Virus record (IMG/VR): IMGVR_UViG_3300027759_000045
Location: 124,001-188,000 of that record
DNA length: 64,000 nucleotides
Reading direction: 5' to 3' (one strand)
The position numbers were made by a program, and so were the translations under genes. This document shows, in pieces, positions 5,122 through 34,624 of the stretch (its first letter is position 1; each line of letters begins with the position of its first letter). The notes beneath the pieces were generated by a model. That model was not told the DNA's origin, did no database searches, and was given only the letters and a program-made list of their open reading frames with translations.

Positions 5122-5457
5122 ATGGCAATAACAAACACTTATCCAGACGAATACAAACAATGGCAACCTGAACAGGTTAAAATCATTGGAGACCGAGCTG
5201 TAAAGTTTAGTGACGTGTGCGTACACCAGATACGCATGGGCGATGTAGAGGATCCTGATTTGTATGTGGCACAACCTATATATGAATGGCAGGAATCAGA
5301 TGCTGGTAAGTTCATCATGGAACATGCGGTAGAAAAACCTTATTGGACTCGTCAAGCAGATATTGCCAGTTACGGGCACTTGTATCGTATAATGGCTAGA
5401 CTCAGCGAGCAAGATCAAACTTTCTGGACTCTTAAATGGGGAGAATTTAAAAAATGA
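5122..5457 (+). CDS. Hypothetical protein
   Basis: 111-aa ORF with GDVEDPDLY motif; ATGA-coupled to the epimerase. Confidence 0.75.
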   Translation: MAITNTYPDEYKQWQPEQVKIIGDRAVKFSDVCVHQIRMGDVEDPDLYVAQPIYEWQESDAGKFIMEHAVEKPYWTRQADIASYGHLYRIMARLSEQDQTFWTLKWGEFKK

Positions 5458-6422
5458 AAATACTAGTAACAGGCGGACTTGGTCTTATTGGACACAATGT
5501 TGTGCAACGATTAGAAGCACAAGGACACGACGTTGTCATTACCGACACTCGTACCAACTACGGTATTATTCCCCAGGCTGAAGTTGACTACTTGATGTCA
5601 GAACGTTTGAAAAAGATATCAGGCAACAACATATATCACATTGACATTACCGATGCTGACAATGTTGATTGGCTAGTAAATAAACACCAGCCTGAAGTGA
5701 TTATTCACATGGCCAGTTTCCCCCGACAGAAAGTTGTCAATGCTAACCCTGCCTGGGGTAGTCGTGTGATGAGCGAAGGTCTTATTAACATCTGTGAGAG
5801 TGCCAAAAAACACCATGTCAGTCGTGTAGTGTACATTAGCAGTAGCATGGTATACGGCGACTTTGATGATCAAGTTGAAGAGGACTACAATTGCCGACCC
5901 ATTGGCCAATATGGCATCTTAAAATTAACAGGAGAAGACATTGTCAAAGACTACCATCGTCGCGGCGCTTTTGATTACGCTATTATTAGGCCTAGTGCTG
6001 TATACGGCCCCTTGGATGTGGAGGACCGAGTTGTTGCAAAATTTATGCTCACAGCAATGCGAGGCGGCGTTCTCCGAGTTAATGGGGCAGGGGAGACGTT
6101 AGATTTTACCTACGTAGATGATGCCGCTGATGGCATTGTGGCTGCCGCAACACTTGAACACGCACGTAATGATACATACAATATTACCAAATCACATTCA
6201 GTGAGTTTGTTACAAGCCGCAGAAATGATTGTGAAGATTGTGGGCCAAGGCACCATTGAATGTCGCGACAAAGATGCAGACTTTCCCAGTCGCGGTGCAT
6301 TAAATATCACCAAGGCCCGGGCTGTACTAGGATATGATCCCCAAGTGGATGTAGAAGAAGGATTCGAAAATTACTTCAACTGGCTTAACAATTCCGTTTA
6401 CTGGTCTCCGAAAACAGTATAA
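5454..6422 (+). CDS. NAD-dependent nucleotide-sugar epimerase/dehydratase (extended SDR)
   Basis: MKILVTGGLGLIG Rossmann motif, SSSMVYG, YGILK (YxxxK), RPSAVYGP and DFTYVDD. Confidence 0.93.
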   Translation: MKILVTGGLGLIGHNVVQRLEAQGHDVVITDTRTNYGIIPQAEVDYLMSERLKKISGNNIYHIDITDADNVDWLVNKHQPEVIIHMASFPRQKVVNANPAWGSRVMSEGLINICESAKKHHVSRVVYISSSMVYGDFDDQVEEDYNCRPIGQYGILKLTGEDIVKDYHRRGAFDYAIIRPSAVYGPLDVEDRVVAKFMLTAMRGGVLRVNGAGETLDFTYVDDAADGIVAAATLEHARNDTYNITKSHSVSLLQAAEMIVKIVGQGTIECRDKDADFPSRGALNITKARAVLGYDPQVDVEEGFENYFNWLNNSVYWSPKTV

Positions 6423-7479
6423 CAATCTCCGTACAGAGATTCTAGACGTCACCGACGAAGTTCTTCGCGGTGGCCAACTCATGAACGGCAACAATACTGC
6501 AGAGTTTGAATCATGGTTGGCTCGAAAGAACCATGTACGCTATGCAGTAACTTGTCATTCTGGCACACACGCACTTGAGATATTGGCCGGATATTGGGCC
6601 ACGGAATCTCCTGTGCCGCATCCTCCTACTGTGTTAATTCCTGCAATGACTTACGTGGCCACTGCCAATGCATTTATACGTGCAGGATGGGATATACACA
6701 TCATTGACACAGATGCACAGGGATTAATCGATCTTACTAAAATTCCCACAGGCATAAGTTACCAAGCAGTGGTGTTGGTCGGTCTATATGGCGCCGCTGT
6801 CACACATCACGGCAGTGTTCGTACCTGGGAACACTGGATACAACATGATACTCTCGTAATTGAAGATGCTGCCCAACATTGGTTAGCTGCCGACTGCACA
6901 AGGATAGGCAAAGGTGGTGCAGCCATCAGTTTTGATCCTATGAAAAATCTTGCTTGTTATGGCAATGGCGGTGCTGTGGTCACAGACAACTTAGATCTAG
7001 CAGAATATGCTAGATCGTGGCGAGACAATGGTAAACCTACACATAAGAACACAGGAACTAACAGTCGCATGAGCGAATTAGACTGTGCGCACATGTTGGT
7101 TAAATCCAAACACATCGATCGTTGGCAAGCACGTAGACAAAAGATCTCAGACCACTGGGCAGATCGGTTTAAAGACACTGGAATACGTTGTTTAATCAAC
7201 GACACCAATGCACACAATCATGCGTTTCATAAGTTTGTTATTGATGTTGACAAACGAGATATATTAAAAGCCAATCTTGCACTGTGCAAAATTGACACGC
7301 GAGTACACTATGCGACTCCATTGCAAGAAATCAGTTTGTATCGTATGTTTCCAGGACCTGACATGTTGGCAGCAAGTTCTAGTCTAGCTCGGCGTGTACT
7401 AAGCCTGCCTATCTACCCCGAACTTACAGACCTAGAAGTCGAATACATCAGCGATCAGGTTGTAAACTGCGTCGCATAA
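6370..7479 (+). CDS. DegT/DnrJ/EryC1/StrS-family PLP-dependent sugar aminotransferase (start uncertain: ATT 6370 or 6391, or ATG 6481)
   Basis: SGTHAL, TYVATANA, IEDAAQ, SFDPMKNL (PLP lysine), GNGGAV and LSLPIYP. Family-like sequence IPFTGLRKQY continues upstream of the first ATG. Confidence 0.92.
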   Translation: MTSTGLTIPFTGLRKQYNNLRTEILDVTDEVLRGGQLMNGNNTAEFESWLARKNHVRYAVTCHSGTHALEILAGYWATESPVPHPPTVLIPAMTYVATANAFIRAGWDIHIIDTDAQGLIDLTKIPTGISYQAVVLVGLYGAAVTHHGSVRTWEHWIQHDTLVIEDAAQHWLAADCTRIGKGGAAISFDPMKNLACYGNGGAVVTDNLDLAEYARSWRDNGKPTHKNTGTNSRMSELDCAHMLVKSKHIDRWQARRQKISDHWADRFKDTGIRCLINDTNAHNHAFHKFVIDVDKRDILKANLALCKIDTRVHYATPLQEISLYRMFPGPDMLAASSSLARRVLSLPIYPELTDLEVEYISDQVVNCVA

Positions 7480-10279
7480 ACGCATAACTGGCCAACCAAG
7501 ACCACTCATAGCTCTTCTTCAAGTCTGCAAAGTTGCCGGCTACTTGGTCGTAGTATTCCACAGCATCTTCGGCGCCCCATTGACTCCATTCGGCATTTTT
7601 AGCTTCACCAGCATTGCTGAGCCACATGTTAAGTCTGTATTCACTTTCGACATCGGGTAAACTGGCTTTTAATTTAAGAACTTCACGGAATGCAGTGCGC
7701 CAAGCTGTCCAAGGTGTTTCATTATAATTGGCTACACCACTAAGCACGGGCACAACTTCGTGCGGTTGATCTAATGTAAAGTCCAATCCTGCTCCAGTAT
7801 TCTTCAACACCATTTTTTTGTTGTAGGCAATCATGGCTTGGTGACCATATGTTAATCCATTTACAGGATTGTATGCGTGGAAGATATAGTGTTTGGGTTG
7901 TTGCATACGATCAGGTTGCCAGGTCCAATCAAACATTTGATTCACTTCTAGCTTGGCAAACACAGCAAAGAACCAAGGCGTGGTGCTGGCTCTAGCAGCC
8001 GCATGATACGCTGCCACTCGTCCATTTACACCTTCTACCACATGAACGCGGTTTGTGTACCTTGACTCGTTGGCCAGATATATTGTCATCTGCAAATAAT
8101 TAGATCCAGCATTAGGTTCGCCATTGCTGATAAACACAATGTCCAATGGTTGATCTGTTAACTTGCGATGTGTTCGATCTATGTGTGTGTAGTCATACAA
8201 CTGTGTGCGAATGTCACCTACTGCTACTCTCGGCACAATTACACTAGTGGCACCTGAACTTAGTGGCACAATAGTTTTGGTCTCTTTGCGCCACAAAGGC
8301 ACAGTAAACACATCAGAGCACACAGTGTCTACAGTGGTAAATGTGGCCAATGGACCCGACCATGTTGTGTTTTTAACTACATCAACATGACTGTCTTCTG
8401 TGTGTTGGATCACAGGCATGGGTCTGCGTGGAACACGAATTTTAGGCACATAGTTTACACTGTACCATTCCAGCAGAGCTTTCTTTTCTGCACGAGCCGC
8501 AAATGTAGGAACATGCATATAAAATGTATCTCCAAACTTTTGTTCATTGCTGGCAAATACATGTAGCATGGTACTTTGCCATTTTTCTGGATGCCACGAA
8601 AAGTCAAAGTCTGTGTAGTCACAAATACTGCTACACACCCATACAAACTCATGCTCACCAACAAGACTCTTTGCCAACCGTATCAGAGTATCTCTATAGT
8701 TGTCAAAGTAACGCACCTTCTTTATGGCTCCGGGAACTTGTCCTCCAGCACCATCCAGGTGATCTATTTCAATAACAGGAACTGTGACTGTTTCAATCTT
8801 GATCTCTACATGCTCAAGGTATTTGATTTCTGTTGCGCCTGACACATGATACTGTGGACCACCGGTCTTTTGCCATTGTGTAGCAAACTGATAGATGTAA
8901 GCGGGTTCGCCAGGATCCGGAACCCAAGTGAAGTCCACGTGTTCTTCACGCACACCCTCAGGTAGCACCCACATTGTTTTGTTGGGTAATAGTGCGGCTC
9001 TGGGGTAGTCCATGTACTTGACGGGCAATTCTTGATCCTGGGGCTCAGAACAATAACGCAACATGGGCATTTTCTCTGCAGGCCAGTGTTGATTTCCAAA
9101 CACATATATCATAGGCGGCTCTCCTGGATCGGGCTGCCAAGAGTAGTCGAACTCATAATCATGATGACTGATGTTGTCCCAGTGTAGCTGTGTTTCCGGC
9201 AACTGAGCACGTGGGTAATCCATGTACTTGTGTTCAGTAGCACCAGGCACAGTGTATGTAACAGTGGGCATGATCTCTGCTGAATGCCACTGATTACCAA
9301 ACACGTAGATGTAGGGTGGATCTCCTGGATCTGGAATCCATGAATAATCCCAGTCGCACTGTTGTATAGTGTGCCACTTGTTGTCTTGCCGTACAGGTAA
9401 TTTAGCCCGGGGATAATCCATGTACTTGCGTTCAGTGGCATGGCCCACACAGTATTCCACTGTGGGCATGATCTCTGCTGTGTGCCATTCATTGCCAAAC
9501 ACATATATGTAATCTGGATCTGTAGGATTGGGTCTCCAACTATGATCAAAGTCAGCAATATCGTGCAACACGCCGAAGTCTGCAGGACTAGATGCTACAG
9601 TAGCCACAATATTATCTACATACTTGATTTCTGTGCTGCCAGGCACTGTATAAACTATAGTAGGTTCTAATACTCCAGGATTCCATTGATTGCCAAACAC
9701 ATACGTATAAGGAGGATCAAAAGGATTTGGTTCCCAAGAATAATCAAACTTGCTCACTGCCAGGTTATGCGCAAACAACTGTGGCTGTGGTAATCTCGTT
9801 GTTTTTAAATCCATGTATTTGCGTTCTGTTGCTCCAGGAACAACATACTCTACACTGGCTTTATATTCAGGCGAGTTCCACTGATTACCAAATACATAGA
9901 TATAAGGTGGCTCTGCTGGATCTGGATGCCAGGACCAATCCCATGCCTCTTGATCTATTGTTTCGTGTATTTTCCATGAATCTTCATTGTTAATTCTATG
10001 CAATACTACATCAGTGTGATAGGTTGTGTCTGTATAACCTGCCGCAGGAACAAGATACGTGCCGGAATCTTTTTGCCACTGACTTGCCCATGCATGTCGT
10101 TGGTGTGCTTGCCAAGGCACAGGTTCCCAAAGAAAATCAAAGCCAGAGTAGTCCGATAAGTAATTTACAAACCAAAAGAAACGTGTGCGACTCTGCTGTT
10201 GTGCTTGTTCAATGGTATCTACTGCCTGCTCATGCGCAAACAAATTGGGCTTTTTTCCAGAATAAAATACATCAAACAT
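7448..10279 (-). CDS. Trp/Pro-rich repeat protein with C-terminal glycosyltransferase-like domain
   Basis: Six tandem repeats of about 65 aa. The C-terminal domain aligns by eye with the 30134-31060 protein (VEGVNG..AAYHAAA, NPVNGLTYG, AWRTAFREVLKL). Confidence 0.75.
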   Translation of the reverse strand: MFDVFYSGKKPNLFAHEQAVDTIEQAQQQSRTRFFWFVNYLSDYSGFDFLWEPVPWQAHQRHAWASQWQKDSGTYLVPAAGYTDTTYHTDVVLHRINNEDSWKIHETIDQEAWDWSWHPDPAEPPYIYVFGNQWNSPEYKASVEYVVPGATERKYMDLKTTRLPQPQLFAHNLAVSKFDYSWEPNPFDPPYTYVFGNQWNPGVLEPTIVYTVPGSTEIKYVDNIVATVASSPADFGVLHDIADFDHSWRPNPTDPDYIYVFGNEWHTAEIMPTVEYCVGHATERKYMDYPRAKLPVRQDNKWHTIQQCDWDYSWIPDPGDPPYIYVFGNQWHSAEIMPTVTYTVPGATEHKYMDYPRAQLPETQLHWDNISHHDYEFDYSWQPDPGEPPMIYVFGNQHWPAEKMPMLRYCSEPQDQELPVKYMDYPRAALLPNKTMWVLPEGVREEHVDFTWVPDPGEPAYIYQFATQWQKTGGPQYHVSGATEIKYLEHVEIKIETVTVPVIEIDHLDGAGGQVPGAIKKVRYFDNYRDTLIRLAKSLVGEHEFVWVCSSICDYTDFDFSWHPEKWQSTMLHVFASNEQKFGDTFYMHVPTFAARAEKKALLEWYSVNYVPKIRVPRRPMPVIQHTEDSHVDVVKNTTWSGPLATFTTVDTVCSDVFTVPLWRKETKTIVPLSSGATSVIVPRVAVGDIRTQLYDYTHIDRTHRKLTDQPLDIVFISNGEPNAGSNYLQMTIYLANESRYTNRVHVVEGVNGRVAAYHAAARASTTPWFFAVFAKLEVNQMFDWTWQPDRMQQPKHYIFHAYNPVNGLTYGHQAMIAYNKKMVLKNTGAGLDFTLDQPHEVVPVLSGVANYNETPWTAWRTAFREVLKLKASLPDVESEYRLNMWLSNAGEAKNAEWSQWGAEDAVEYYDQVAGNFADLKKSYEWSWLASYAFMRRSLQPDR
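8810..9950 (-). repeat. Six tandem coding repeats, consensus [FW]DYSWxPDPxxPPYIYVFGNQW...PTVxYxVPGATExKYMD
   Basis: Seen directly in the translation; ends are approximate. Confidence 0.9.
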
Positions 10280-11393
10280 GATAAGAATAGACGAGATTTA
10301 TAATAATACCTTTTGGCCTTGGTTACATAAAAATAAACCAGGTACGAGATTGTTTTTTTGTGATCCGCCGGGAAGAACCGACCCGGATGCTTTATTTAAC
10401 TTGGGCAGTGATGACATTGTAGAAACCGACTACGTGTGGATGCACGATCAAGAACCGTGTTGGACGGAAGAATATCGGCCATTGTTTGATGATGTAGCAA
10501 GACGGAATACGGACTTGTGGTGGCATCAATACAATCAAGTAAAACCAGAACAATTTGGACATGTTGTTGTAAGCGAGCGCGGCGAGTATGTTGAGCAACT
10601 TTGTGCCGCATATGGATGGAAAAGTCACTATTATTTTTACCATGGGTGGGCTTGTCAAGACTGGTTCCGTGGATATGATAAGTCATTCTTAATTCCTCGT
10701 GCAAGAGATCGTGCGCCCACAAAAACTTTTATGAGTCCCAATCGTATCGTAGGCGGCAAGCGTGATCATCGTGTGTTGTTTTTGTATAATATATTCAAAC
10801 AAGGGTTAGAGCATAATCATATCAGTGTGCCACGAGTATGCCAATACGAAAATGTTGACATAAGTGTTGTGGCCAACAAGTATTGTAACACATATCCAGA
10901 TATTTCGCAAGTGTTTGAAAGTGCCGCTTTACCGAGATTGTTTGAAGGAGAAGAGTCACAACAAATGACCAGTTGTTGGCTAGGCAACTATGCAGAAGCA
11001 CAAGACAGTTTGGTATATGTTCCTACCGAAACTGTATACTTTGGCCGCAGAACACACATAACAGAAAAAACATTTAAAGCAATTGCATTAGAAATGCCAT
11101 TTGCATTGGTTGCACCTGCCCACAGTTTGGAGTATATGCGCAGTTACGGATTTAAAACATTTAATGACATATTTGACGAAAGTTACGACACCGAAACTGA
11201 TGACGTACTGCGTGTAGAAAAGGTTACTCGATTATTAAAAGACTTAGACAATCAAAGTGCGAGAGAACGTCAATCAATACATCGTGCATGTTTACCTATA
11301 GTGGAACACAACTTCCGACACTTTTACATGGGCGGATTAACAAATATATTATGGCCGGAACTAACTGGCATGCTCCATGGCTTACGCAAATAA
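10278..11393 (+). CDS. Glycosyltransferase-like protein (ET...TEK..K...PF family), paralog 1
   Basis: ETVYFGRRTHITEKTFKAIALEMPF...GFKTF...DESYD resembles the GT10 donor-binding E...Y.TEK motif. Confidence 0.55.
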   Translation: MIRIDEIYNNTFWPWLHKNKPGTRLFFCDPPGRTDPDALFNLGSDDIVETDYVWMHDQEPCWTEEYRPLFDDVARRNTDLWWHQYNQVKPEQFGHVVVSERGEYVEQLCAAYGWKSHYYFYHGWACQDWFRGYDKSFLIPRARDRAPTKTFMSPNRIVGGKRDHRVLFLYNIFKQGLEHNHISVPRVCQYENVDISVVANKYCNTYPDISQVFESAALPRLFEGEESQQMTSCWLGNYAEAQDSLVYVPTETVYFGRRTHITEKTFKAIALEMPFALVAPAHSLEYMRSYGFKTFNDIFDESYDTETDDVLRVEKVTRLLKDLDNQSARERQSIHRACLPIVEHNFRHFYMGGLTNILWPELTGMLHGLRK

Positions 11394-15385: not shown

Positions 15386-15407
15386 AAACTAAAAAAGACG
15401 TGGGCTA

Positions 15408-18279: not shown

Positions 18280-18280
18280 A

Positions 18281-27634: not shown

Positions 27635-28497
27635 TACTTTAGATCCTTTTTCTGTTGTGCAAAGATTTGATCACCATTGTACTGTTCTGGACAAAACTTA
27701 CACTGATCAATGGGCTGGTCTAGACTGTTCACAAACTGCTGTTTAGCTGTGCCACTGTCAGTGATCTTCAAGGGTCTGTAACTCAGCATGAGTTCACGGT
27801 CCTCTGCGCTGAGTGTGAGTGAGTGCTGTTGATCAAATTCGGGCAACACTGCCGCAACACCGCACTTGTACAGCTCACCACGTATGAAATGGTGGCAGGT
27901 TTTCATGTGGCAAATGTCATGTGCTCGAGCTACGTCACTTTGGTGCAGTGTTAGTGCGCCGTCTGTTTTGACAATGGCACCTTGGTGGAACCACCAATTG
28001 TATTCTATTTTGATGCGTACCCCACGTGCATCAGTAATGGTCATGTACTGTTGATAGGGGTTGTCTGTGTTAAACGTCACAGTGTGCGGGGCTTGACCAA
28101 AGTCTCGAACCTTTTGTATGATTTCTGATTTGTGCTGTTTGTTGTGTATGCCAACCCACAGCTCAATGTTGCGATGTTGCTCTAGTATGGGATAAAGATC
28201 GGCATGTCGATCCAATCTAAAGCCATTGCTGATAATTCTTATTTTCTTTCCAGGCCATAGTTGATTTATGCCCTGCACCCAGGCCAAGAACGTGGGGTTC
28301 AGTAGCGGCTCGCCGCCCAGGATGCCAATACTGCCAATATCAACTTGTTCGGCCCACTGCTGATATACTTCAGCATAGTCACTCCAGCGTTGATAGCCCG
28401 TGAAGTTGTAGTCATTGAAACGATTGCAACCTGCGCATGCTAGATTGCAAACATTAATGATATAAAACTCTGCGTAGGGTATGTGTAGCTTAGGCAT
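27634..28497 (-). CDS. Radical SAM enzyme with C-terminal Cys-rich domain
   Basis: CNLACAGC, GGEPLL and SNG; C-terminal C...C...LYKC...CKFC. Confidence 0.88.
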   Translation of the reverse strand: MPKLHIPYAEFYIINVCNLACAGCNRFNDYNFTGYQRWSDYAEVYQQWAEQVDIGSIGILGGEPLLNPTFLAWVQGINQLWPGKKIRIISNGFRLDRHADLYPILEQHRNIELWVGIHNKQHKSEIIQKVRDFGQAPHTVTFNTDNPYQQYMTITDARGVRIKIEYNWWFHQGAIVKTDGALTLHQSDVARAHDICHMKTCHHFIRGELYKCGVAAVLPEFDQQHSLTLSAEDRELMLSYRPLKITDSGTAKQQFVNSLDQPIDQCKFCPEQYNGDQIFAQQKKDLK

Positions 28498-29449
28498 GTA
28501 GGTCTTGCATTTGAATTCGTTTCAACAACTGATAGTTGTGTTCCAGCACTGATTGCATGTCTGCGTACATGGCGTCTAGTTCAGCAAGGCTTTTTTCAGC
28601 CAATTGCTCTATTAAGCGCACAATTTCTTTTAGTTGATAGTCTGGTGGATCTTCGCTGTAGCCTTCATCCCACCAGGCGTCAAATGTGCGAAATCCCAGG
28701 GCACGTAATCTAGACAGAAACTTCTGTGGCCCATGCACAACAAATGGTGTGCGCATCAGCATGGGGCGCCAGATCTTTTCATCAATATAAAATGTGTCCC
28801 CTGACCAGTAAGTTAAATTCACAATTTCCACAAAGAAGTTGGGATACGCTTTGGTAATGTTTAGTGTGACAGGATTACAAATGGGATATTGATCAATACT
28901 GTCAATTGTCAGCGGTGAGTGTTGCAGTAATTCCACAGCGTCTTGAACTTCTGCCCAGGAATGATTGTTGAACATCATGTCTTCCACGCCAATAAAAGGC
29001 CTGTGATACTGATTGGTCACTTGGGTGTGATAAGTCTGCATGGTTCGATCGCGATGATGTGCATACAAGTAACTGCCCAGATACAGTCGGGGCTGATTGC
29101 CATGCCCAATAAAGTGTCCAAAATGCTTGGCAATTGTTTTGTTGCTAGCAGGCGGACTATATTGTTGTGCGGCTGTGAGATATACCATTTGCGGTTTTAT
29201 AACAATGTTGTAACGGTCATGTGTTTCGGCCAAGTTACAAGTTGTGATATAAATGTCACTGGCACTGTAATTGAAACGACTGCACATATTATCCAGCAAA
29301 TCATACAGGCCCAGGCTGCGAGCACAGGGTCCTTCGCGTTTGGTACCAATATCAATGCGCGGCACGGCCTGTGACATGGCATGGGCAATGTCAATAATCA
29401 GTTGATCACGGTTCCAAATTGTGCTGTCACTGTTGGCAAATTCAATCAT
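28490..29449 (-). CDS. Glycosyltransferase-like protein (TEK family), paralog 4
   Basis: FYIDEKIWRPMLMRTPF...GFRTFDAWWDEGY. Confidence 0.5.
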   Translation of the reverse strand: MIEFANSDSTIWNRDQLIIDIAHAMSQAVPRIDIGTKREGPCARSLGLYDLLDNMCSRFNYSASDIYITTCNLAETHDRYNIVIKPQMVYLTAAQQYSPPASNKTIAKHFGHFIGHGNQPRLYLGSYLYAHHRDRTMQTYHTQVTNQYHRPFIGVEDMMFNNHSWAEVQDAVELLQHSPLTIDSIDQYPICNPVTLNITKAYPNFFVEIVNLTYWSGDTFYIDEKIWRPMLMRTPFVVHGPQKFLSRLRALGFRTFDAWWDEGYSEDPPDYQLKEIVRLIEQLAEKSLAELDAMYADMQSVLEHNYQLLKRIQMQDLHA

Positions 29450-30140
29450 TCATGTACTCCGCCACATGCTCAAATACTTCTGACTTTGACAGTACGTATT
29501 GACCAAATGGTGCGCAACTGTGTAAATCATAAGGCGGTACAGCATTGTTGGTCAACGCAACATCTGCGCAGAATCTCTGCATTATTTCTGCGTCAGACAC
29601 AGGCTCACTTACCAAATTGATTTCTCTAATGTCATGTTCAATCACTGTGGCAATGTCCCTGCACAGTCTTGACAGCGGATAATACTGCCTGACCACAGCA
29701 CCGTTGACACGATCCAAGTATTGACGATGGCGAATATCAAACAATAGATTTTTACTGATTGCAGGGTGAATCAAGGTACACAGTCTAATAACATGACAGC
29801 ATTCAAATTGAGTCAGGGCAAAATGTTCCAATGCCAGTCTGTTGCTGCCATACACAGAATCTGGTGCGTACACAGCGTCCACTGATCCGATCAGTACAAA
29901 TCTATTGGCCCTAACTGTGCGCAAGTTATCAGCAAGATATCCAATGCTGTCTGTGTCCCACTGTGGTTGTTGATTGGCCCGCAAGCGATTGCCTGATAGT
30001 GCCGCACAGTACACAGTGTCAAAATTACAATGTTGTATCTGCTCTATATTGGCAGAGTTGTAGGTTTGGTCAAATTCGAGGTTGGCACCTAACACTGTGC
30101 CAATCAAACCAGTGTGACCTATCAACACGTTCATTACCAA
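29442..30140 (-). CDS. Short NAD-dependent epimerase/reductase (SDR)
   Basis: VLIGHTGLIG Rossmann motif and YGSNR (YxxxK variant); may start at ATG 30134. Confidence 0.7.
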   Translation of the reverse strand: MVMNVLIGHTGLIGTVLGANLEFDQTYNSANIEQIQHCNFDTVYCAALSGNRLRANQQPQWDTDSIGYLADNLRTVRANRFVLIGSVDAVYAPDSVYGSNRLALEHFALTQFECCHVIRLCTLIHPAISKNLLFDIRHRQYLDRVNGAVVRQYYPLSRLCRDIATVIEHDIREINLVSEPVSDAEIMQRFCADVALTNNAVPPYDLHSCAPFGQYVLSKSEVFEHVAEYMND

Positions 30141-31060
30141 CCTTCTTGCTTCCTGATCACATCAATTTCTCGAACCATAACGCCTTGATTGTGCCAACCG
30201 ATACGATAATGATGTTTGAAAAACTTGCTGGCTTCGTCTTCGTACCAGACCATTGGCAAGTCTAACTGTGTACTTAGTTCTTCGGCTACGCGACCTAACA
30301 ATAGTTCCGGCTCAGTGTCTTTGACTGTGTCCCACAACTCGTTTAACGAATCAAACCATTGCACTTGTTTATGATCCCAATTGGTCAGCATGGTCATGTA
30401 CGTGCCCATTCGAGCACCAGCAATGGCCCATACTCCATGTTCAGCATCACGACCCACATTGTGCCACACAGTCAAGTTGTCTAAGTTGCGCTGATGTACA
30501 CGCTGTTTAAATTCTGCCACTGTGGGACGCACACCTTTGTTCAGGCACATCTTTACACCTTCGCGGAATCCTGCTCGCCAAGCATGAAAAGCTGAACCAT
30601 TGGGATATGTTGTACTATAGCAATCGTGCATGGCCCAATATAAGGGATCAAAACAAAACTCTACTTCGGTGGCGGCTGTGCCATCTGTGTTTTCATGTGT
30701 TTTCATTTCGTTGACAAATGTGCGTGTCCATGAACTCATGCCACCGTTGCCATACATCAAGCCATTGATGTTGTTACACGCTCTCCAACGGAACACTGCA
30801 CGTTCATAATCTGTAGTAGGAAATGTTAGTGTTTGATTGAAGAATTCAGGATGCGGCATATTATCGCCGTCGATCAAAATAAAACGTTCTGTTTCACTTG
30901 CGGCAGCGGCAGCTTTGTGTGCGGCATCTGATCCTTTGACTCCGTCAACACGTTTGGCCCAAGGCACCATGTTGCGAATTCGAACCCAGAATTCTTCCTT
31001 CTGTGGTTCGTCGTAGGTCAAGTAGATGCAGTCTAGGTCTGCTACATCAATTTGATTCAT
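30134..31060 (-). CDS. GT-A-fold glycosyltransferase-like protein
   Basis: Hydrophobic strand followed by a DxD motif (RFILIDGDN), GVKG..AAHKAAA and YGNGG. Confidence 0.6.
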   Translation of the reverse strand: MNQIDVADLDCIYLTYDEPQKEEFWVRIRNMVPWAKRVDGVKGSDAAHKAAAAASETERFILIDGDNMPHPEFFNQTLTFPTTDYERAVFRWRACNNINGLMYGNGGMSSWTRTFVNEMKTHENTDGTAATEVEFCFDPLYWAMHDCYSTTYPNGSAFHAWRAGFREGVKMCLNKGVRPTVAEFKQRVHQRNLDNLTVWHNVGRDAEHGVWAIAGARMGTYMTMLTNWDHKQVQWFDSLNELWDTVKDTEPELLLGRVAEELSTQLDLPMVWYEDEASKFFKHHYRIGWHNQGVMVREIDVIRKQEGW

Positions 31061-31394
31061 TTGATTTTAAACTCCATTTAATATGCGGTTGGTCTTCTGC
31101 AACAACAACAGAAACATTCTCAATTGAACATGGTGTTCCGGTTGTGCTGGGCGTTAACTTACTCGTGGGTCTTTTGTACACAACTGGCACTAATTTGCCG
31201 TCAACAACTCGAACATTGAACCTACTGAGTTGATATGTTTCTGCATCAATCTCTATATAATTACCTGGCAAGTCTTCCATGCTGTAAGATACTGGCTCAC
31301 CACGCTCATTGTAGTATAATCTAAAAAAAATAGGCACAGGGTCCGGTGCAGGCTCTGCCAGTGCCAGCCAAAAATTTTCAGTTGTTTCATTCAT
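31047..31394 (-). CDS. Hypothetical protein
   Basis: In-frame ATG 31394 (MNETTENF) overlaps the upstream stop; FRLYYNERGEP motif. Confidence 0.7.
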   Translation of the reverse strand: MNETTENFWLALAEPAPDPVPIFFRLYYNERGEPVSYSMEDLPGNYIEIDAETYQLSRFNVRVVDGKLVPVVYKRPTSKLTPSTTGTPCSIENVSVVVAEDQPHIKWSLKSNESN

Positions 31395-31701
31395 CTGTAG
31401 GCGGAATACCGTTTGAGTGTCGGTCTGTTGTTTTGTCAACATCTTGGAAAAGTCGTTTTTCCTGTGCTGTCAGTGTGTCTTTGTGTGTTCTGCGAGGATT
31501 ACCGCACAATGGACATTGTGGATTACCACAGTCCATCACATGATGTTTGGCCAATCGGTGTGGTTCTTTTACTGCTAGATCTTTGTTGGTCATGCCGTGT
31601 GCTTTGGCAATCTTAACTTGTCGGGCCACTGCATTTTCATCTTTTAATAGACGTTTACTTTTTTTAAATTTATCTTCTTCTTTACTCAAAGCAATCTCCA
31701 A
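31387..31701 (-). CDS. Small basic protein with putative Zn-binding Cys motif
   Basis: CGNPQCPLCGNPR. The true start may be TTG 31689, which has a GGAG SD and overlaps the upstream TGA. Confidence 0.7.
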   Translation of the reverse strand: MEIALSKEEDKFKKSKRLLKDENAVARQVKIAKAHGMTNKDLAVKEPHRLAKHHVMDCGNPQCPLCGNPRRTHKDTLTAQEKRLFQDVDKTTDRHSNGIPPTDE

Positions 31702-32459
31702 TCTTTATTATGATAATGCACAAGTCCCCATTGTGCTACTGTGTTGATCCGCACACCCGGATCGGTATTTTCCCACACTAGTTCTTCGGTCCAATCATCA
31801 GTATGTGTAGGAATTACATGTTGTTTCATGTGTACAATGGTTGGTCCAAGGCCTGCGGGCAGTGTGACCAGTTCTGGACCAATGATCAGTGCGGCCATGG
31901 CATATACCACATCTGTACTGGGAATTTCTTCTGGAAACTTTAACAAAGTCTTGTAGGAACTCCAGTTTGAAAAGATTTTCTCTACTAGATTAAAAAAATC
32001 CTGTGCTGTTTTGCTCACACGCCAGTAGGTTATTGCGTTGTACACATCGGGCAGGCAGTTGTCGTCAAACAGTCGACGATAGTATCTACTGGCTGCAGGC
32101 CGATCATAAAAGTCTCTGCAACCCTGACTGATCACAACATCACGCTTTTCAAACATGGTCCACCAGTGATCAACAGGGCTGGCAGCAATCATGTCTGCTT
32201 CTAGTTTGATTGTTTGTCTATACGGACTGGCGCGGAACACCTGCCAGTCATTGGCATAGCCACCTTGGTCTCCGTACGGCAGTTCAACCACATGAGTAAA
32301 CAATGACCAGTCACACCTGTTGTTAGTTAATATGGCTATGTTAGCGTCAGGATGCCATTGACGTATGCTCATGGCCAGCTGTTCTGCACAGTCAGTATAG
32401 CTGACTGTGTCTGTGTTTACAGCCGGAATCAAATATCCACGTTCAGAGAGGATTGGCAA
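31686..32459 (-). CDS. GT8-like glycosyltransferase
   Basis: SPYRQTIKLEADM (ExD at the DxD position), STDVVYA and VHMK. Confidence 0.65.
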   Translation of the reverse strand: MPILSERGYLIPAVNTDTVSYTDCAEQLAMSIRQWHPDANIAILTNNRCDWSLFTHVVELPYGDQGGYANDWQVFRASPYRQTIKLEADMIAASPVDHWWTMFEKRDVVISQGCRDFYDRPAASRYYRRLFDDNCLPDVYNAITYWRVSKTAQDFFNLVEKIFSNWSSYKTLLKFPEEIPSTDVVYAMAALIIGPELVTLPAGLGPTIVHMKQHVIPTHTDDWTEELVWENTDPGVRINTVAQWGLVHYHNKDWRLL

Positions 32460-33240
32460 CTATTGCTCCTAATTGTTGTTTGCCCATGGCATGGAAATCC
32501 TGTGTTAGCGTGATCCATCGTGCTTTTTTATCTGGTGTCGAAAAGTCTACTCTATATGAATCTATATCAAGTTGAGTCAATCGATGTTCTGGTGTGATGC
32601 TGGCCAGTGTTCCAGGAATCTCATCAACACACAGTGTGTGTCCATTTAAAGTATTTAACGCAATACTAAGTGCATGATCATTTCTGTAGGTCGCAACAGG
32701 ATTCTTATACAGGTTCCTGTAATGTGTCCAATTATCACGAATCATTTGCATTGAATCAAACAGTAATTCTGAGGCTGTGCTCCGACGGAACATCATCACA
32801 GTGGCCCACCACATGGGCATACGATGATTGCCAAAGTAGTTTAAATCTTCAAATGTTTGTAATCCTGTTACATCCCAGGCCCGGCGATAGCACATGAAAT
32901 CTTGACGGCTGTTTAATACAGTACGCAGTTGAGCACTGGTAATGACATAATCAGCATCGAGTACTAGCGTTTGATCCCAGGGACTTAATTGGTACGCATC
33001 CATACGATTGGTGTTATGCCAAGTTACATTGGTATCATAATCTGAAAAATAACGTTGACCACCACCTTGTGCTTGAGTGTTTACGACATAATCAAAGTCA
33101 CCTAGCGGGTTTTCATAATCAGTTACAACAGCCACAGGGATTCCAAGATGCCTGTGTATGTTTTTGGCAGACCATGCTGCCATAGAAAGATAATCAGTTT
33201 GCTCGTTGTTAAATGCAAATATTAATGCACCAGTGGTCAT
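32443..33240 (-). CDS. GT8-like glycosyltransferase
   Basis: SPWDQTLVLDADY (DxD), RNDHALSIA and FHAMGK; tandem paralog of 31686-32459. Confidence 0.7.
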   Translation of the reverse strand: MTTGALIFAFNNEQTDYLSMAAWSAKNIHRHLGIPVAVVTDYENPLGDFDYVVNTQAQGGGQRYFSDYDTNVTWHNTNRMDAYQLSPWDQTLVLDADYVITSAQLRTVLNSRQDFMCYRRAWDVTGLQTFEDLNYFGNHRMPMWWATVMMFRRSTASELLFDSMQMIRDNWTHYRNLYKNPVATYRNDHALSIALNTLNGHTLCVDEIPGTLASITPEHRLTQLDIDSYRVDFSTPDKKARWITLTQDFHAMGKQQLGAIVANPL

Positions 33241-33542
33241 CGTTGTTTATTAAGTTCTTCGTATTCGATCAACCAAGCATTCATTTGCTCTTGCCAGCGT
33301 TGCATGGCCAGACCACGCAGTTCTTCAGGCCGAACCAGTACCGGAGTTTCATACAAGTCTAACAGCACTGCATCACCTGGAGGCACAGTGGCCAAGATGT
33401 TTAAGAGTTCAGGGCCGGCACACCACATGCCGCTAGCGTGTGCAAATACCAGCTTGGCTTGATATTTTTCTTTTAGCAATCGTCGGGCGGCCACGTGATC
33501 AAAACGGGCACGACCGTGTGCAATTAGTTGTTCAGTATTCAT
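33237..33542 (-). CDS. Hypothetical protein, first gene of the glycosyltransferase/radical SAM operon
   Basis: 101-aa ORF, ATGA-coupled to the GT8-like gene. Confidence 0.75.
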   Translation of the reverse strand: MNTEQLIAHGRARFDHVAARRLLKEKYQAKLVFAHASGMWCAGPELLNILATVPPGDAVLLDLYETPVLVRPEELRGLAMQRWQEQMNAWLIEYEELNKQR

Positions 33543-33549
33543 ATTGTTT

Positions 33550-33596: not shown

Positions 33597-33616
33597 GGTA
33601 AACCGCTACAGTTCAA

Positions 33617-34612: not shown

Positions 34613-34624
34613 GTTGTTATCCTA

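What the first reader, a model, noticed from the sequence alone, without database searches (positions are those of the whole stretch)
5454..33542. A ~28 kb phage-encoded pathway for a heavily tailored amino/guanidino/carbamoyl glycan, next to the tail fibre genes
Seen: one contiguous, mostly translationally coupled island with 2 SDR epimerases, a DegT/StrS aminotransferase, an amidinotransferase, a NodU/CmcH/TobZ carbamoyltransferase, 8 radical SAM enzymes, about 8 glycosyltransferase-like genes in three families, and SGNH-like and isochorismatase-like hydrolases. Established: these families work together in aminoglycoside biosynthesis (StsC-type aminotransferase and StrB1 amidinotransferase for streptidine, TobZ carbamoylation, and the twitch radical SAM enzymes BtrN and NeoN acting on sugar or cyclitol carbons). 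Inference: the phage makes its own NDP-sugars, attaches them and remodels them into an unusual cationic glycan. The most likely target is virion proteins, because Thr-rich fibre genes are adjacent. Host envelope, DNA bases or a free metabolite remain possible. I know of no characterised phage pathway with this composition.
Basis: partly seen in the sequence, partly recalled or inferred. Interest (0 to 1): 0.92.

Follow-up and report, generated by a model that had tools for sequence, protein, structure and literature searches.

The report
Jumbo-phage glycan-building and tailoring gene island
A 347-kb uncultured phage, like hundreds of its relatives, carries a tightly packed ~28-kb set of sugar-making, sugar-attaching and radical-chemistry enzymes right after its tail-fibre genes; it probably decorates the virus particle with an unusual glycan, but the target is not proven.

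Summary
The island is real and is fixed in a large clade of uncultured jumbo myophages. Tools confirm:
- one extended SDR
- a DegT aminotransferase
- an AGAT/StrB1-type amidinotransferase
- a TobZ/NovN-type O-carbamoyltransferase
- eight radical SAM enzymes, six of them in the uncharacterised NF033640 family, whose auxiliary-cluster 'twitch' domain is N-terminal
- eight GT-like genes in three families: GT-B fold and GT-A fold by AlphaFold/Foldseek, and GT8-like by a marginal profile match

The second SDR and the SGNH-like and isochorismatase-like hydrolases got no support; they sit in rare, variable cassettes.

Anchored on a structural gene, 61 of 61 relatives carry the GT core after the fibre genes. 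The cultured Ralstonia phage RsoM2USA has a mini-version in the same order.

No island protein has a membrane helix. There is no cyclitol synthase, flippase or polymerase, and no room for precursor-peptide genes. A conserved terminator-like hairpin and a TATAAT element separate the island from the fibre genes.

Best reading (about 0.4): a cytoplasmic pathway that assembles and tailors a glycan on virion, probably fibre, proteins. Host envelope, DNA and a free metabolite are not excluded. I found no published description of this pathway.

The parts
5122..5457 (+). u111, a small conserved protein. Its stop overlaps the SDR start by 4 nt. Function unknown.
   Evidence: The order SDR-u111-ThyX is conserved in relatives. 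No Pfam hit.
5454..6422 (+). Extended SDR, an NDP-sugar epimerase/dehydratase-type enzyme. GxxGxxG and YxxxK motifs are present.
   Evidence: Pfam Epimerase 2.3e-44 and GDP_Man_Dehyd 3.7e-32. Sequence.
6481..7479 (+). DegT/DnrJ/EryC1/StrS-family PLP aminotransferase.
   Evidence: Pfam 5.3e-56. Paired with the SDR in most relatives.
7448..10279 (-). 943-aa protein ('BIG943'). It has six ~66-aa repeats (WxPDPxxPPYIYVFGNQW) and a C-terminal domain homologous to GTc (GT-A-like). It lies antisense inside a plus-strand block.
   Evidence: Repeats. Homology to GTc. Found in 69 of 80 loci. Homologues are 533-2567 aa long.
10278..11393 (+). GTa1, a GT-B-fold glycosyltransferase-like protein.
   Evidence: AF2 pLDDT 88.7. 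Foldseek PDB matches are all GT-B (OtsA, SenB, WaaG, SdgB), best E 2e-4. Viral paralogues include one fused to a UDP-Glc/GDP-Man dehydrogenase domain.
11377..12564 (+). GTa2, a paralogue of GTa1.
   Evidence: BLASTP 7e-12 to GTa1. Shares the invariant E-K (TEK) motif.
12557..13576 (+). Amidinotransferase (AGAT/StrB1/HsvA/SxtG superfamily).
   Evidence: Profile A2 against PDB: 6.9e-18 to AGAT. Catalytic Cys (GGISCCTQD) and His (GHGDA) align.
13525..14607 (+). Radical SAM enzyme with an N-terminal SPASM/twitch-like domain. Divergent from the six paralogues. Lies in a variable cassette.
   Evidence: Pfam SPASM at residues 46-112, then Radical_SAM at 132-288. Found in 18 of 80 loci.
14597..15385 (+). 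Lies in a variable cassette.
   Evidence: No Pfam or PDB match. Found in 1 of 80 loci.
15408..16673 (-). NT1, an N-terminal-twitch radical SAM (NF033640).
   Evidence: 224 bits against a cut-off of 170. Four N-terminal Cys plus CxxxCxxC.
16670..18181 (-). O-carbamoyltransferase (NodU/CmcH/TobZ family). HHHSH metal motif is present.
   Evidence: Pfam Carbam_trans_C 1.6e-48 and _N 3.7e-31. PDB NovN 3e-46, GdmN, TobZ 4e-35.
18281..19348 (-). U355, a conserved protein of unknown fold, always between NT2 and the carbamoyltransferase.
   Evidence: No Pfam, PHROG or PDB-profile hit. Found in 53 of 80 loci. Has 75 invariant columns.
19327..20625 (-). NT2, an N-terminal-twitch radical SAM.
   Evidence: NF033640, 283 bits.
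20606..21826 (-). NT3, an N-terminal-twitch radical SAM.
   Evidence: NF033640, 351 bits.
21823..23106 (-). NT4, an N-terminal-twitch radical SAM.
   Evidence: NF033640, 403 bits.
23087..24544 (-). NT5, an N-terminal-twitch radical SAM. The true start is probably downstream of the first ATG.
   Evidence: NF033640, 291 bits. 119-nt overlap with the upstream gene.
24426..25565 (-). GTa3, a GT-B-like paralogue.
   Evidence: BLASTP 1.5e-13 to GTa2.
25549..26949 (-). NT6, an N-terminal-twitch radical SAM.
   Evidence: NF033640, 302 bits. Present in 48 of 48 structurally anchored loci that reach it.
26936..27634 (-). Lies in a variable cassette.
   Evidence: No Pfam or PDB match. Rare in relatives.
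27634..28497 (-). Radical SAM enzyme with an N-terminal core and a Cys-rich C-terminus. Lies in a variable cassette.
   Evidence: Pfam Radical_SAM 5e-9. Found in 1-7 of 80 loci.
28490..29449 (-). GTa4, a GT-B-like paralogue. Lies in a variable cassette.
   Evidence: BLASTP 7e-10 to GTa1.
29442..30140 (-). Unsupported.
   Evidence: No Pfam hit. No similarity to the SDR.
30134..31060 (-). GTc, a GT-A-fold glycosyltransferase-like protein. It is the most conserved island gene (72-97% identity).
   Evidence: AF2 pLDDT 83. Foldseek best match is PBCV-1 A64R, E 5e-4, prob 1.0; all matches have the GT-A/nucleotide-sugar fold. 61 of 61 loci.
31047..31442 (-). u131, a conserved small globular protein of unknown function.
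   Evidence: 80 of 80 loci. Alignment.
31387..31701 (-). u104, a basic CxxC...CxxC protein, present in a minority of relatives.
   Evidence: Sequence. 13 of 80 loci.
31686..32459 (-). GTb1, probably a GT8-like (GT-A) transferase.
   Evidence: Deep profile A8 against PDB hits only glycogenins, E 1e-3 to 2e-2. Invariant Asp of the DxD motif. 61 of 61 loci.
32443..33240 (-). GTb2, a paralogue of GTb1.
   Evidence: BLASTP 5e-5. 61 of 61 loci.
33237..33542 (-). u101, a conserved small protein and the first gene of the minus-strand island block.
   Evidence: 79 of 80 loci. Weak homologue in RsoM2USA at the same position.
33543..33616 (-). Intergenic region: a terminator-like GC hairpin with a T-run, then TATAAT 7 nt before the u101 ATG.
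   Evidence: Sequence. Hairpin in 59 of 73 and a -10-like hexamer in 57 of 73 relatives, with compensatory stem changes.
33617..36579 (-). Context: fibre-like genes fib331 (Thr/Ser/Gly-rich) and fib427, plus u206, a conserved gene with only weak sub-threshold Pfam matches.
   Evidence: Conserved in 61 of 61 loci.
36730..51297 (-). Context: a 4855-aa giant structural ORF with an FG-GAP repeat and a sub-threshold CBM5/12 match.
   Evidence: Weak homology to RsoM2USA ORF361, a virion protein by mass spectrometry (PMC8504454).

Best explanation
The island is a self-contained cytoplasmic pathway that makes an aminosugar donor, assembles an oligosaccharide with soluble glycosyltransferases, and then heavily tailors it.

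Proposed steps:
1. The SDR and the DegT aminotransferase convert a host NDP-hexose into an NDP-amino-deoxy sugar. No nucleotidyltransferase is encoded, so the donor nucleotide-sugar comes from the host.
2. Up to eight soluble glycosyltransferases of GT-B, GT-A and GT8-like kinds build the glycan.
3. Six to eight radical SAM enzymes of the N-terminal-twitch family perform H-abstraction chemistry on it, such as oxidation, epimerisation, deoxygenation or C-C/C-methyl formation.
4. An amidinotransferase converts an amine to a guanidino group, and an O-carbamoyltransferase carbamoylates a hydroxyl.

The most likely acceptor is a virion protein, probably the fibre proteins encoded immediately upstream or the 4855-aa structural protein. 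This would resemble how chloroviruses, mimiviruses and some mycobacteriophages glycosylate their own particles. Two hypervariable cassettes inside a conserved frame would diversify the glycan between strains.

Shown: the enzyme families, the folds of two GT families, the synteny and the absence of membrane proteins. Inferred: the substrates, the order of steps, the chemistry of the radical SAMs and the acceptor.
For: - Enzyme families.
- GT folds: and, marginally, 85.
- The core is fixed in the clade. Anchored on the structural gene u206, the genes GTb2, GTb1, u131 and GTc follow the fibre genes in 61 of 61 loci, and NT6 in 48 of 48.
- Order GIANT-u206-fib427-fib331-u101-GTb2-GTb1-u131-GTc-NT6-GTa3-NT5-NT4-NT3-NT2-U355-CBT, all on one strand.
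- The same order (giant virion ORF ... fib427-like, u101, GTb2, GTb1, GTc, N-twitch rSAM, GTc-like) survives at only 30-37% identity in the cultured Ralstonia phage RsoM2USA. Its upstream ORFs 361, 359 and 356 are virion proteins by mass spectrometry.
- No predicted TM helix in any island protein and no flippase, polymerase or initiating transferase. The acceptor must therefore be reachable in the cytoplasm.
- Two hypervariable cassettes (spacing -7 to 4239 nt and -17 to 4624 nt) sit in a conserved frame, as in surface-glycan loci.
- The best structural match of the most conserved GT is the chlorovirus capsid-glycan transferase A64R.
- Carbamoyltransferase and N-twitch rSAM are also linked in RsoM2USA's second locus and in marine virus AG-345-D19, there with the amidinotransferase.
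- Bacterial N-twitch rSAM genes have GT2, GT1/4 and PhyH neighbours.
Against: - No glycan has been observed; the acceptor is inferred from gene position only.
- A conserved terminator-like hairpin and a TATAAT element lie between fib331 and the island. The island is therefore its own transcription unit and may not be expressed late.
- The DxD of GTc is replaced by FAK in the BIG943 branch.
- Foldseek E-values (2e-4 to 5e-4) and TM-scores (0.3-0.4) are modest.
- GTb support is marginal.
- No member of NF033640 has a known reaction.
- Peripheral GTs of LPS pathways also lack TM helices, so the soluble nature of the enzymes does not exclude a lipid-linked acceptor supplied by the host.
- The amidinotransferase and the SDR/AT pair were not seen in all relatives within the fetched flanks (33-43 of 80).
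Confidence: 0.4

Rival explanations
1. Host-envelope remodelling. The phage makes tailored NDP-sugars and peripheral GTs that feed into the host's own lipid-linked LPS, capsule or S-layer glycan pathway. This would change the cell surface during the long infection, for superinfection exclusion or to prevent progeny being trapped on debris.
For: - Soluble GT-B/GT-A enzymes of LPS core and O-antigen pathways (WaaG is among the fold matches) also lack TM helices.
- A promoter-like TATAAT after a terminator suggests expression independent of the fibre operon.
- Variable cassettes resemble O-antigen loci.
- Carbamoyltransferases and LPS-type genes are common auxiliary genes in cyanomyophages and pelagiphages.
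Against: - No initiating phosphoglycosyl transferase, flippase, polymerase, ligase or any membrane protein in 28 kb.
- The position after the fibre genes is conserved even in a phage of a very different host group. This is hard to explain if the pathway must plug into host-specific envelope machinery.
Confidence: 0.17
2. A free cationic glycoside or pseudo-oligosaccharide, an aminoglycoside-like or other small metabolite. It is made in the infected cell and released at lysis, acting on competitors, on the host's translation or defence, or as a signal.
For: - The enzyme-family combination (DegT, amidinotransferase, TobZ-type carbamoyltransferase, twitch-type rSAM, GT-B including VldE/OtsA-like fold matches) is typical of aminoglycoside and aminocyclitol clusters.
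- A cyanophage trio of the same families has been called 'antibiotic synthesis genes' (PMC12801897).
- All the enzymes are soluble.
Against: - No cyclitol synthase (DOIS or inositol-phosphate synthase type), no resistance gene and no exporter in the island.
- Eight GTs are many for a small molecule.
- A strictly conserved position next to fibre genes is not expected for a metabolite cluster.
Confidence: 0.12
3. DNA hypermodification. The GTs and tailoring enzymes build a glycan or another bulky adduct on a modified base of the phage genome to evade restriction and CRISPR.
For: - Phage GT arrays that put di- and tri-saccharides on hydroxymethyl-pyrimidines are known (Pyle et al. 2024, cited in PMC12619734).
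- Radical SAM, PLP enzymes and carbamoyl groups occur in known base hypermodifications (my own knowledge).
- The island abuts a nucleotide-metabolism gene, ThyX at 4409-5101.
- A promoter independent of the fibre genes.
Against: - ThyX has the canonical RHRxxSxxxxSxRY motif, so thymidylate is made normally.
- No hydroxymethylase, TET/JBP enzyme, DNA-kinase or DpdA-type gene was seen in the window.
- Short palindromes AGCT, CGCG and TGCA are depleted (0.65-0.76 observed/expected). This hints that the DNA is still exposed to restriction.
- The rest of the 347-kb genome was not examined.
Confidence: 0.08
4. Radical-SAM maturation of proteins. The N-twitch radical SAMs act on amino-acid residues of fibre or other virion proteins (epimerisation, crosslinks, formylglycine-type oxidation), and the GTs add sugars as a secondary step or are unrelated.
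For: - Most SPASM/twitch radical SAMs with known function modify peptides or proteins. The best PDB match of the NT profile is a RiPP cyclopropyl synthase (8vpo, 3e-6), followed by SkfB and YydG.
- The genes lie next to large structural proteins.
Against: - The PDB similarity is limited to the generic rSAM core.
- No RRE domain and no room for small precursor genes; the only gaps are 22-99 nt.
- u131 is a conserved globular protein, not a precursor.
- In three virus groups the NT genes travel with a carbamoyltransferase, and in bacteria with GT2/GT1 and dioxygenases.
Confidence: 0.08

Closest known systems
Self-encoded virion glycosylation of giant viruses: chlorovirus PBCV-1 (A64R and partners) and Mimivirus fibril glycan clusters
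   Same: - Soluble, virus-encoded GTs and NDP-aminosugar enzymes (SDR dehydratase/epimerase plus a DegT-type aminotransferase) work in the cytoplasm, independent of host membrane machinery.
- The glyco-genes lie beside the gene of a glycosylated structural protein (Mimivirus; my own knowledge).
- GTc's best structural match is A64R.
- The GTa fold has a metagenomic mimivirus relative.
   Different: - The host is bacterial and the virus is a tailed phage.
- Giant-virus clusters have no radical SAM array, no amidinotransferase and no carbamoyltransferase.
- Sequence identity is about 12%.
Mycobacteriophage virion glycosylation (Freeman et al. 2023, cited in PMC12619734)
   Same: Phage-encoded GT operons next to structural genes; glycans on capsid and tail proteins.
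   Different: - Those systems are small (a few GTs and methyltransferases).
- They are found in actinobacteriophages and have no radical SAM, amidino or carbamoyl tailoring.
- No sequence relationship was found here.
Aminoglycoside/aminocyclitol biosynthetic clusters (BtrN, NeoN, StsC/BtrS, StrB1, TobZ)
   Same: The same enzyme superfamilies occur together: DegT aminotransferase, amidinotransferase (StrB1 4e-14), O-carbamoyltransferase (TobZ 4e-35), GT-B transferases and auxiliary-cluster radical SAMs.
   Different: - No cyclitol synthase.
- The radical SAMs belong to a different, circularly permuted family (N-terminal twitch).
- No resistance or export genes.
- It is located in a phage structural region.
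Ralstonia phage RsoM2USA ORF348-358 and ORF199-202 (all annotated as hypothetical)
   Same: - Homologous mini-module in the same order after a giant virion protein: SDR, fib427-like, u101, GTb2, GTb1, GTc (37%), N-twitch rSAM (35%), GTc-like.
- A second locus with an NT5-like rSAM (52%) and a carbamoyltransferase (45%).
   Different: - Two N-twitch rSAMs in the two fetched loci (one per locus), against six NF033640 paralogues here (eight radical SAMs in all).
- No GTa family, amidinotransferase or DegT gene in the fetched stretches.
- The carbamoyltransferase is about 90 kb away.
Cyanomyovirus S-SCSM2R ORF305-309 and marine virus AG-345-D19
   Same: - S-SCSM2R: DegT-like, amidinotransferase (31% identity) and radical SAM together (for the gene trio, for the amidinotransferase match).
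- AG-345-D19: amidinotransferase, carbamoyltransferase and N-twitch rSAM on 8 kb.
   Different: These are much smaller sets, with no GT array shown and no link to fibre genes shown. Their function is equally unknown.

Membership tests
O-carbamoyltransferase (NodU/CmcH/TobZ) | Two-domain architecture: a Kae1/ASKHA-like N-domain and a YrdC-like C-domain, both above the Pfam cut-offs. | tested here: met
   Carbam_trans_N 109 bits (cut-off 24) and Carbam_trans_C 165 bits (cut-off 27). PDB NovN, GdmN and TobZ, E 3e-46 to 4e-35.
O-carbamoyltransferase (NodU/CmcH/TobZ) | His-rich metal-binding motif in the N-domain. | tested here: met
   The sequence 'MSHHHSHAAAG' is present. Its assignment as the metal site rests on my knowledge of TobZ/Kae1.
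Amidinotransferase (AGAT/StrB1, guanidino-group-modifying fold) | Whole-length profile similarity to solved members. | tested here: met
   AGAT 6.9e-18, StrB1 3.6e-14, HsvA 5.6e-14, SxtG 2.9e-12, in three collinear stretches.
Amidinotransferase (AGAT/StrB1, guanidino-group-modifying fold) | Catalytic Cys near the C-terminus and a catalytic His. | tested here: met
   Cys in GGISCCTQD aligns with the Cys of AGAT's GGFHCWT. His in GHGDAVF aligns with PHIDATF. Both are invariant in 16 relatives.
NF033640 N-terminal-twitch radical SAM | Score above the NCBIfam cut-off (170 bits) over the full length. | tested here: met
   Six paralogues score 224-403 bits. 13525-14607 and 27634-28497 score only 35 and 27 bits, so they are not members.
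NF033640 N-terminal-twitch radical SAM | CxxxCxxC SAM cluster, plus a Cys set for an auxiliary cluster placed N-terminal to the core. | tested here: met
   Invariant C147/C151/C154 and N-terminal C32/C50/C93/C96 in all six. Pfam SPASM lies before Radical_SAM.
BtrN/NeoN-type sugar-modifying twitch radical SAM | C-terminal twitch domain and specific sequence relationship to BtrN. | tested here: not met
   The domain order is permuted. BtrN matches only the auxiliary-cluster domain, at E 0.04-0.06. This does not exclude similar chemistry.
Aminoglycoside/aminocyclitol biosynthetic cluster | A cyclitol-forming enzyme (2-deoxy-scyllo-inosose synthase or inositol-phosphate synthase). | tested here: not met
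   No DHQ-synthase-type or inositol-phosphate-synthase Pfam hit in any island ORF.
Glycosyltransferase, GT-B fold (GTa family) | Two Rossmann-like domains, with structural matches dominated by GT-B enzymes. | tested here: met
   Model pLDDT 88.7. 49 of the top 50 PDB matches are GT-B enzymes (the exception, rank 7, is a chain of a respiratory complex). Best E 2e-4, prob 0.99, TM 0.3-0.4. No sequence-level family could be assigned.
Glycosyltransferase, GT-A fold (GTc and BIG943 C-terminus) | Single Rossmann-like nucleotide-sugar-binding domain. | tested here: met
   Model pLDDT 83. All top matches are GT-A enzymes or nucleotidyltransferases of the same fold; A64R E 5e-4, prob 1.0.
Glycosyltransferase, GT-A fold (GTc and BIG943 C-terminus) | Conserved DxD metal/nucleotide-sugar motif. 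| tested here: inconclusive
   GTc has an invariant DGD, but the homologous position is FAK in the BIG943 branch.
GT8 (glycogenin/LgtC-like), GTb family | Profile similarity to GT8 through the DxD motif. | tested here: inconclusive
   With a 75-sequence profile, only glycogenins match, at E 1e-3 to 2e-2 over the first ~100 residues. One Asp of the DxD motif is invariant.
Virus-encoded virion glycosylation system | A glycan covalently attached to structural proteins. | not testable with these tools
   Needs glycoproteomics of virions.
Virus-encoded virion glycosylation system | GT genes linked to structural genes across relatives. | tested here: met
   61 of 61 loci anchored on u206. The same order is found in RsoM2USA.
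O-antigen/capsule-type surface polysaccharide locus | Initiating polyprenyl-phosphate transferase, flippase or ABC exporter, and polymerase (all membrane proteins). | tested here: not met
   No such Pfam hits and no TM helix in any island protein.
DNA glycosyl/base hypermodification system | An enzyme that makes the modifiable base (dNMP hydroxymethylase, TET/JBP, DpdA and similar). | tested here: not met
   None in the 64-kb window; only a canonical ThyX. The other ~283 kb of the genome were not examined.
RiPP maturation cluster | Precursor peptide gene and an RRE-type recognition domain. | tested here: not met
   No intergenic room, no RRE/PqqD Pfam hit, and the small proteins are conserved globular proteins.

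The most novel reading that the evidence does not exclude
A globally common clade of ~350-kb aquatic phages coats its tail fibres or particle with a strain-variable glycan. After assembly, an array of six or more radical SAM enzymes from a family with no known function (NF033640, permuted N-terminal twitch domain) rewrites the sugars, which are then guanidinylated and carbamoylated. This would be the first function for that family, the first radical-SAM-tailored protein glycan, and a new kind of phage surface chemistry that could affect adsorption, stability or evasion of host receptors and grazers.
Probability: 0.3. Interest if true: 0.88.

Novelty: new variant of a known kind. Interest (0 to 1): 0.74.

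Why it matters
Virus-encoded glycosylation is known from giant eukaryotic viruses and a few mycobacteriophages. Nothing with this enzymatic depth has been described for a phage: eight GTs, eight radical SAMs, amidino- and carbamoyl-transfer.

The island is not a curiosity of one genome. In all nearest relatives the GT core sits in the same place.

It gives a genomic context, and a cultured handle in RsoM2USA, for assigning a reaction to the uncharacterised NF033640 radical SAM family, which is also widespread in Bacteroidota, Bdellovibrionota and Elusimicrobia.

If the product is on the virion, it bears on phage adsorption, host range, environmental persistence and immune recognition. If it is a free cationic glycoside or a DNA adduct, it would be a new phage weapon or shield. 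Either way the enzymes are candidates for new sugar chemistry.

Tried and rejected
- DNA search of the island against 50,697 phage records found no match.
- Pfam, PHROG and NCBIfam gave nothing for 16 of the 28 island ORFs, even at E <= 10.
- PDB sequence profiles for U355, GTc and GTb (first, shallow profile) found nothing. The GTa profile gave only spurious TAL-repeat hits.
- Per-member Pfam scans of the GTa and GTb alignments gave only noise.
- A 5.8-billion-protein search with the GTa profile returned only unannotated close relatives. It showed abundance, not function.
- hhalign of GTb against GTc found no relationship.
- The first genome scan with six paralogues failed for lack of a conserved stretch. 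It was redone with an orthologue alignment.
- Literature searches for NF033640, 'N-terminal twitch' and jumbo phage + radical SAM + GT + aminotransferase found nothing relevant. The 'moraphage' paper describes a different lineage.
- The T4-type late promoter TATAAATA occurs once in the window, upstream of fib427, but is not conserved there (5 of 75), so I draw no timing conclusion from it.
- TGTATAAT is not enriched window-wide.
- Rejected: treating 'SGNH-like', 'isochorismatase-like' and the second 'SDR' as established.
- Rejected: calling the island an aminoglycoside cluster, because it has no cyclitol synthase.
- Rejected: assuming co-transcription with the fibre genes, because of the conserved hairpin and -10 element.

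Full report
WHAT THE WINDOW IS

The window is part of an uncultured jumbo myophage. Positions 25962-46579 are 100% identical to IMG/VR contig UViG_3300027759_000045, which is 346,856 bp long. Baseplate wedge, hub, gp25-like and virion proteins lie at 51-64 kb. The wedge and hub proteins are 31-35% identical to those of the Rak2/CBB/PA5oct/Atu_ph07/Phosso group. The island has no DNA-level match among 50,697 phage records.

CHECK OF THE OBSERVATION

From 5454 to 33542 there are 27 ORFs packed almost without gaps. Most neighbours overlap by 1-22 nt. The only spacers are 58, 22 and 99 nt inside the block and 74 nt at its fibre-side edge. u111 (5122-5457), whose stop overlaps the SDR start, is a 28th ORF that I count with the island.

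Confirmed by family models:
- An extended SDR, 5454-6422, Pfam Epimerase 2e-44.
- A DegT/StrS aminotransferase, 6481-7479, 5e-56.
- A two-domain O-carbamoyltransferase, 16670-18181. Its PDB relatives are NovN, GdmN and TobZ.
- Eight radical SAM proteins.

The 339-aa ORF at 12557-13576 has no Pfam hit. A profile built from 16 relatives matches the solved amidinotransferases AGAT (7e-18), StrB1, HsvA and SxtG, with the catalytic Cys and His aligned.

Six of the eight radical SAMs are paralogues. All exceed the cut-off of NCBIfam NF033640, 'twitch domain-containing radical SAM protein' (224-403 bits against 170). They are unusual because the auxiliary-cluster domain with its four invariant Cys comes before the CxxxCxxC core. 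BtrN matches only that domain, and only weakly (E 0.04). I found no paper that assigns a reaction to this family.

THE GT-LIKE GENES

- GTa: 10278, 11377, 24426 and 28490.
- GTb: 31686 and 32443.
- GTc: 30134, plus the C-terminal 240 residues of the 943-aa protein at 7448-10279, which are clearly homologous to GTc.

None is seen by Pfam or by PDB sequence profiles.

AlphaFold models settle two of the three families.
- GTa1 (pLDDT 88.7): 49 of its top 50 PDB matches are GT-B glycosyltransferases such as OtsA, SenB, WaaG and SdgB. Best E is 2e-4.
  - In the viral structure library it matches many uncultured-phage paralogues and a metagenomic mimivirus protein.
  - It also matches a protein fused to a UDP-glucose/GDP-mannose dehydrogenase domain.
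- GTc (pLDDT 83): it matches GT-A-fold enzymes. The best is A64R, the chlorovirus PBCV-1 capsid-glycan transferase (E 5e-4, prob 1.0).

These scores are modest, with TM 0.3-0.4. The DGD of GTc is FAK in the BIG943 branch.

For GTb I used the one exhaustive profile search. It found 2073 clusters. A deeper profile then matched only glycogenins (GT8), at E 1e-3 to 2e-2. That is suggestive, not firm.

NOT SUPPORTED

- The second 'SDR' (29442-30140) has no Pfam hit and no similarity to the first.
- The 'isochorismatase-like' ORF (14597-15385) has no hits.
- The 'SGNH-like' ORF (26936-27634) has no hits.

All three lie in variable cassettes and occur in only 1-5 of 80 related loci.

DISTRIBUTION

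Three scans of IMG/VR used the carbamoyltransferase, GTc and the neighbouring conserved gene u206 as queries.

The order is conserved:
- One strand: GIANT - u206 - fib427 - fib331 - u101 - GTb2 - GTb1 - (u104) - u131 - GTc - [cassette 1] - NT6 - GTa3 - NT5 - NT4 - NT3 - NT2 - U355 - CBT - [cassette 2].
- Opposite strand: AMD - GTa2 - GTa1 and AT - SDR - u111 - ThyX. BIG943 sits between GTa1 and AT and reads the other way, on the strand of the fibre-side block.

Anchoring on u206 does not presuppose the island. In that scan GTb2, GTb1, u131 and GTc are present in 61 of 61 loci that extend far enough, and NT6 in 48 of 48.

The two cassettes vary from nothing to about 4.2 and 4.6 kb. They often hold genes absent from this window.

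Among cultured phages only Ralstonia phage RsoM2USA has GTc.
- It keeps the same order at 30-37% identity: a giant ORF, SDR, fib427-like, u101, GTb2, GTb1, GTc, N-twitch rSAM, GTc-like.
- Its ORF361, 359 and 356 just upstream are virion proteins by mass spectrometry (PMC8504454).
- It has a second locus pairing an NT5-like rSAM (52%) with a carbamoyltransferase (45%).

A marine single-cell virus fragment carries amidinotransferase, carbamoyltransferase and N-twitch rSAM side by side. A cyanomyovirus has a DegT/amidinotransferase/rSAM trio (for the gene trio, for the amidinotransferase match).

In bacterial chromosomes the family occurs in Bacteroidota, Bdellovibrionota, Elusimicrobia and Acidobacteria at 36-45% identity. 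Its neighbours there are enriched for further rSAM/SPASM genes, PhyH dioxygenases and GT2/GT1 transferases.

WHAT IS ABSENT

- No island protein has a convincing transmembrane segment.
- There is no polyprenyl-phosphate transferase, flippase, polymerase, nucleotidyltransferase, cyclitol synthase, methyl- or acetyltransferase, or RRE domain.
- There is no space for small precursor genes. u131 is a conserved globular protein.
- The window holds a canonical ThyX but no base-hydroxymethylating enzyme.
- Short palindromes AGCT, CGCG and TGCA are moderately depleted.

A COMPLICATION FOR THE FIBRE LINK

The 74-nt spacer between fib331 and u101 has two elements:
- a GC hairpin, AAAGGGCC-TCC-GGGCCCTTT, followed by a T-run;
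- then TATAAT, 7 nt before the ATG.

In relatives the hairpin is present in 59 of 73 loci and the -10-like hexamer in 57 of 73. Stems differ by compensatory changes such as GGGGC/GCCCC, GCCCC/GGGGC and GGACC/GGTCC. The long minus-strand block therefore looks like its own transcription unit. Its timing is unknown.

INTERPRETATION

That this is a glycan assembly and tailoring pathway is well supported; I put it at about 0.8-0.85.

The acceptor is inferred. I favour virion proteins (about 0.4 for the whole statement) for these reasons:
- The position after the fibre genes is deeply conserved, including in RsoM2USA.
- All the machinery is soluble and cytoplasmic, as in chloroviruses and mimiviruses.
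- The locus has a conserved frame with hypervariable cassettes, which is typical of exposed glycans.

The rivals are host-envelope remodelling (0.17), a free cationic glycoside (0.12), DNA hypermodification (0.08) and protein-directed radical SAM maturation (0.08).

The chemistry proposed for the radical SAMs (oxidation feeding transamination, epimerisation, deoxygenation) is by analogy only.

NOVELTY

Virus-encoded glycosylation is a known kind. This composition, with its array of NF033640 radical SAMs plus amidino- and carbamoyl-transferases in a phage structural region, is not described in the searched literature. I rate it a new variant of a known kind, with high interest because of its abundance and because it offers a route to the function of an orphan radical SAM family.

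Noticed in passing
window 36730-51297 (-): A single 4855-aa ORF lies directly downstream of the baseplate wedge gene, whose stop overlaps its start by 1 nt. It has an FG-GAP repeat and a sub-threshold CBM5/12 match. It is conserved in 79 of 80 relatives. It is weakly similar to RsoM2USA ORF361, a >288-kDa virion protein found by mass spectrometry.
   Followed up: partly
window 33543-33616 (-), and the same spacer in L083-L162: A conserved terminator-like hairpin with compensatory stem changes, followed by TATAAT only 6-7 nt before the predicted u101 start codon. This would imply a leaderless or nearly leaderless first gene of the island block.
   Followed up: partly
window 7448-10279 (-): BIG943 lies antisense within a plus-strand gene block. 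Its start codon overlaps the divergent GTa1 start (10278/10279), and its 3' end overlaps the aminotransferase gene by 32 nt. It carries six ~66-aa 'WxPDPxxPPYIYVFGNQW' repeats of unknown fold. Homologues range from 533 to 2567 aa, so the repeat number probably varies.
   Followed up: partly
window 15408-26949 (six genes) and 13525-14607: Seven of the eight radical SAMs have the SPASM/twitch auxiliary-cluster domain N-terminal to the SAM core, a circular permutation relative to BtrN, anSME and the RiPP maturases.
   Followed up: partly
L165, L166 (Haliscomenobacter MAG contigs of 183 and 148 kb); L167-L173: 'Bacterial' MAG contigs carry NT4 homologues at 48-74% identity. They are probably contigs of this phage clade binned into MAGs of many phyla. 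The Haliscomenobacter case might hint at a Bacteroidota host but could equally be mis-binning.
   Followed up: no
BFVD entry A0A6J5TB28: A GTa-fold domain is fused to a UDP-glucose/GDP-mannose dehydrogenase N-terminal domain in an uncultured freshwater phage protein of 788 aa. This independently links the GTa family to nucleotide-sugar metabolism.
   Followed up: no
L225, L227, L181, L208 and other bacterial loci: Bacterial NF033640 genes often sit beside PhyH-type Fe/2OG dioxygenases (7 of 131 neighbouring ORFs), WelO5-type halogenases (2) and GT2 genes. This may be a tailoring toolkit for glycans or natural products.
   Followed up: partly
window 33-1949 (+): An ATPase fragment is followed by a 435-aa protein with an acidic linker and a vWA-like DxSGS metal site. 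Its best PHROG is labelled 'HNH endonuclease', which looks like a mislabel.
   Followed up: no
window 35931-35938 (-): The only TATAAATA (T4-type late promoter motif) in the window lies 22 nt upstream of the fib427 start, before a GGAG. It is conserved in only 5 of 75 relatives.
   Followed up: partly
window 23087-24544 / 24426-25565 (-): A 119-nt overlap between GTa3 and NT5. Homologues align from about residue 37-44 of NT5, so the true NT5 start is probably an internal Met.
   Followed up: no
whole window: No tRNA and no Rfam family in 64 kb. The palindromes AGCT, CGCG and TGCA are depleted (0.65-0.76 observed/expected), and AAGCTT, ACGCGT and AGCGCT are absent.
   Followed up: partly
L163 (RsoM2USA 123-129 kb): RsoM2USA ORF199 (carbamoyltransferase), ORF200/201 (unknown) and ORF202 (NT5-like rSAM, 52%) form a second small module far from the fibre-linked one. 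All are annotated as hypothetical.
   Followed up: partly
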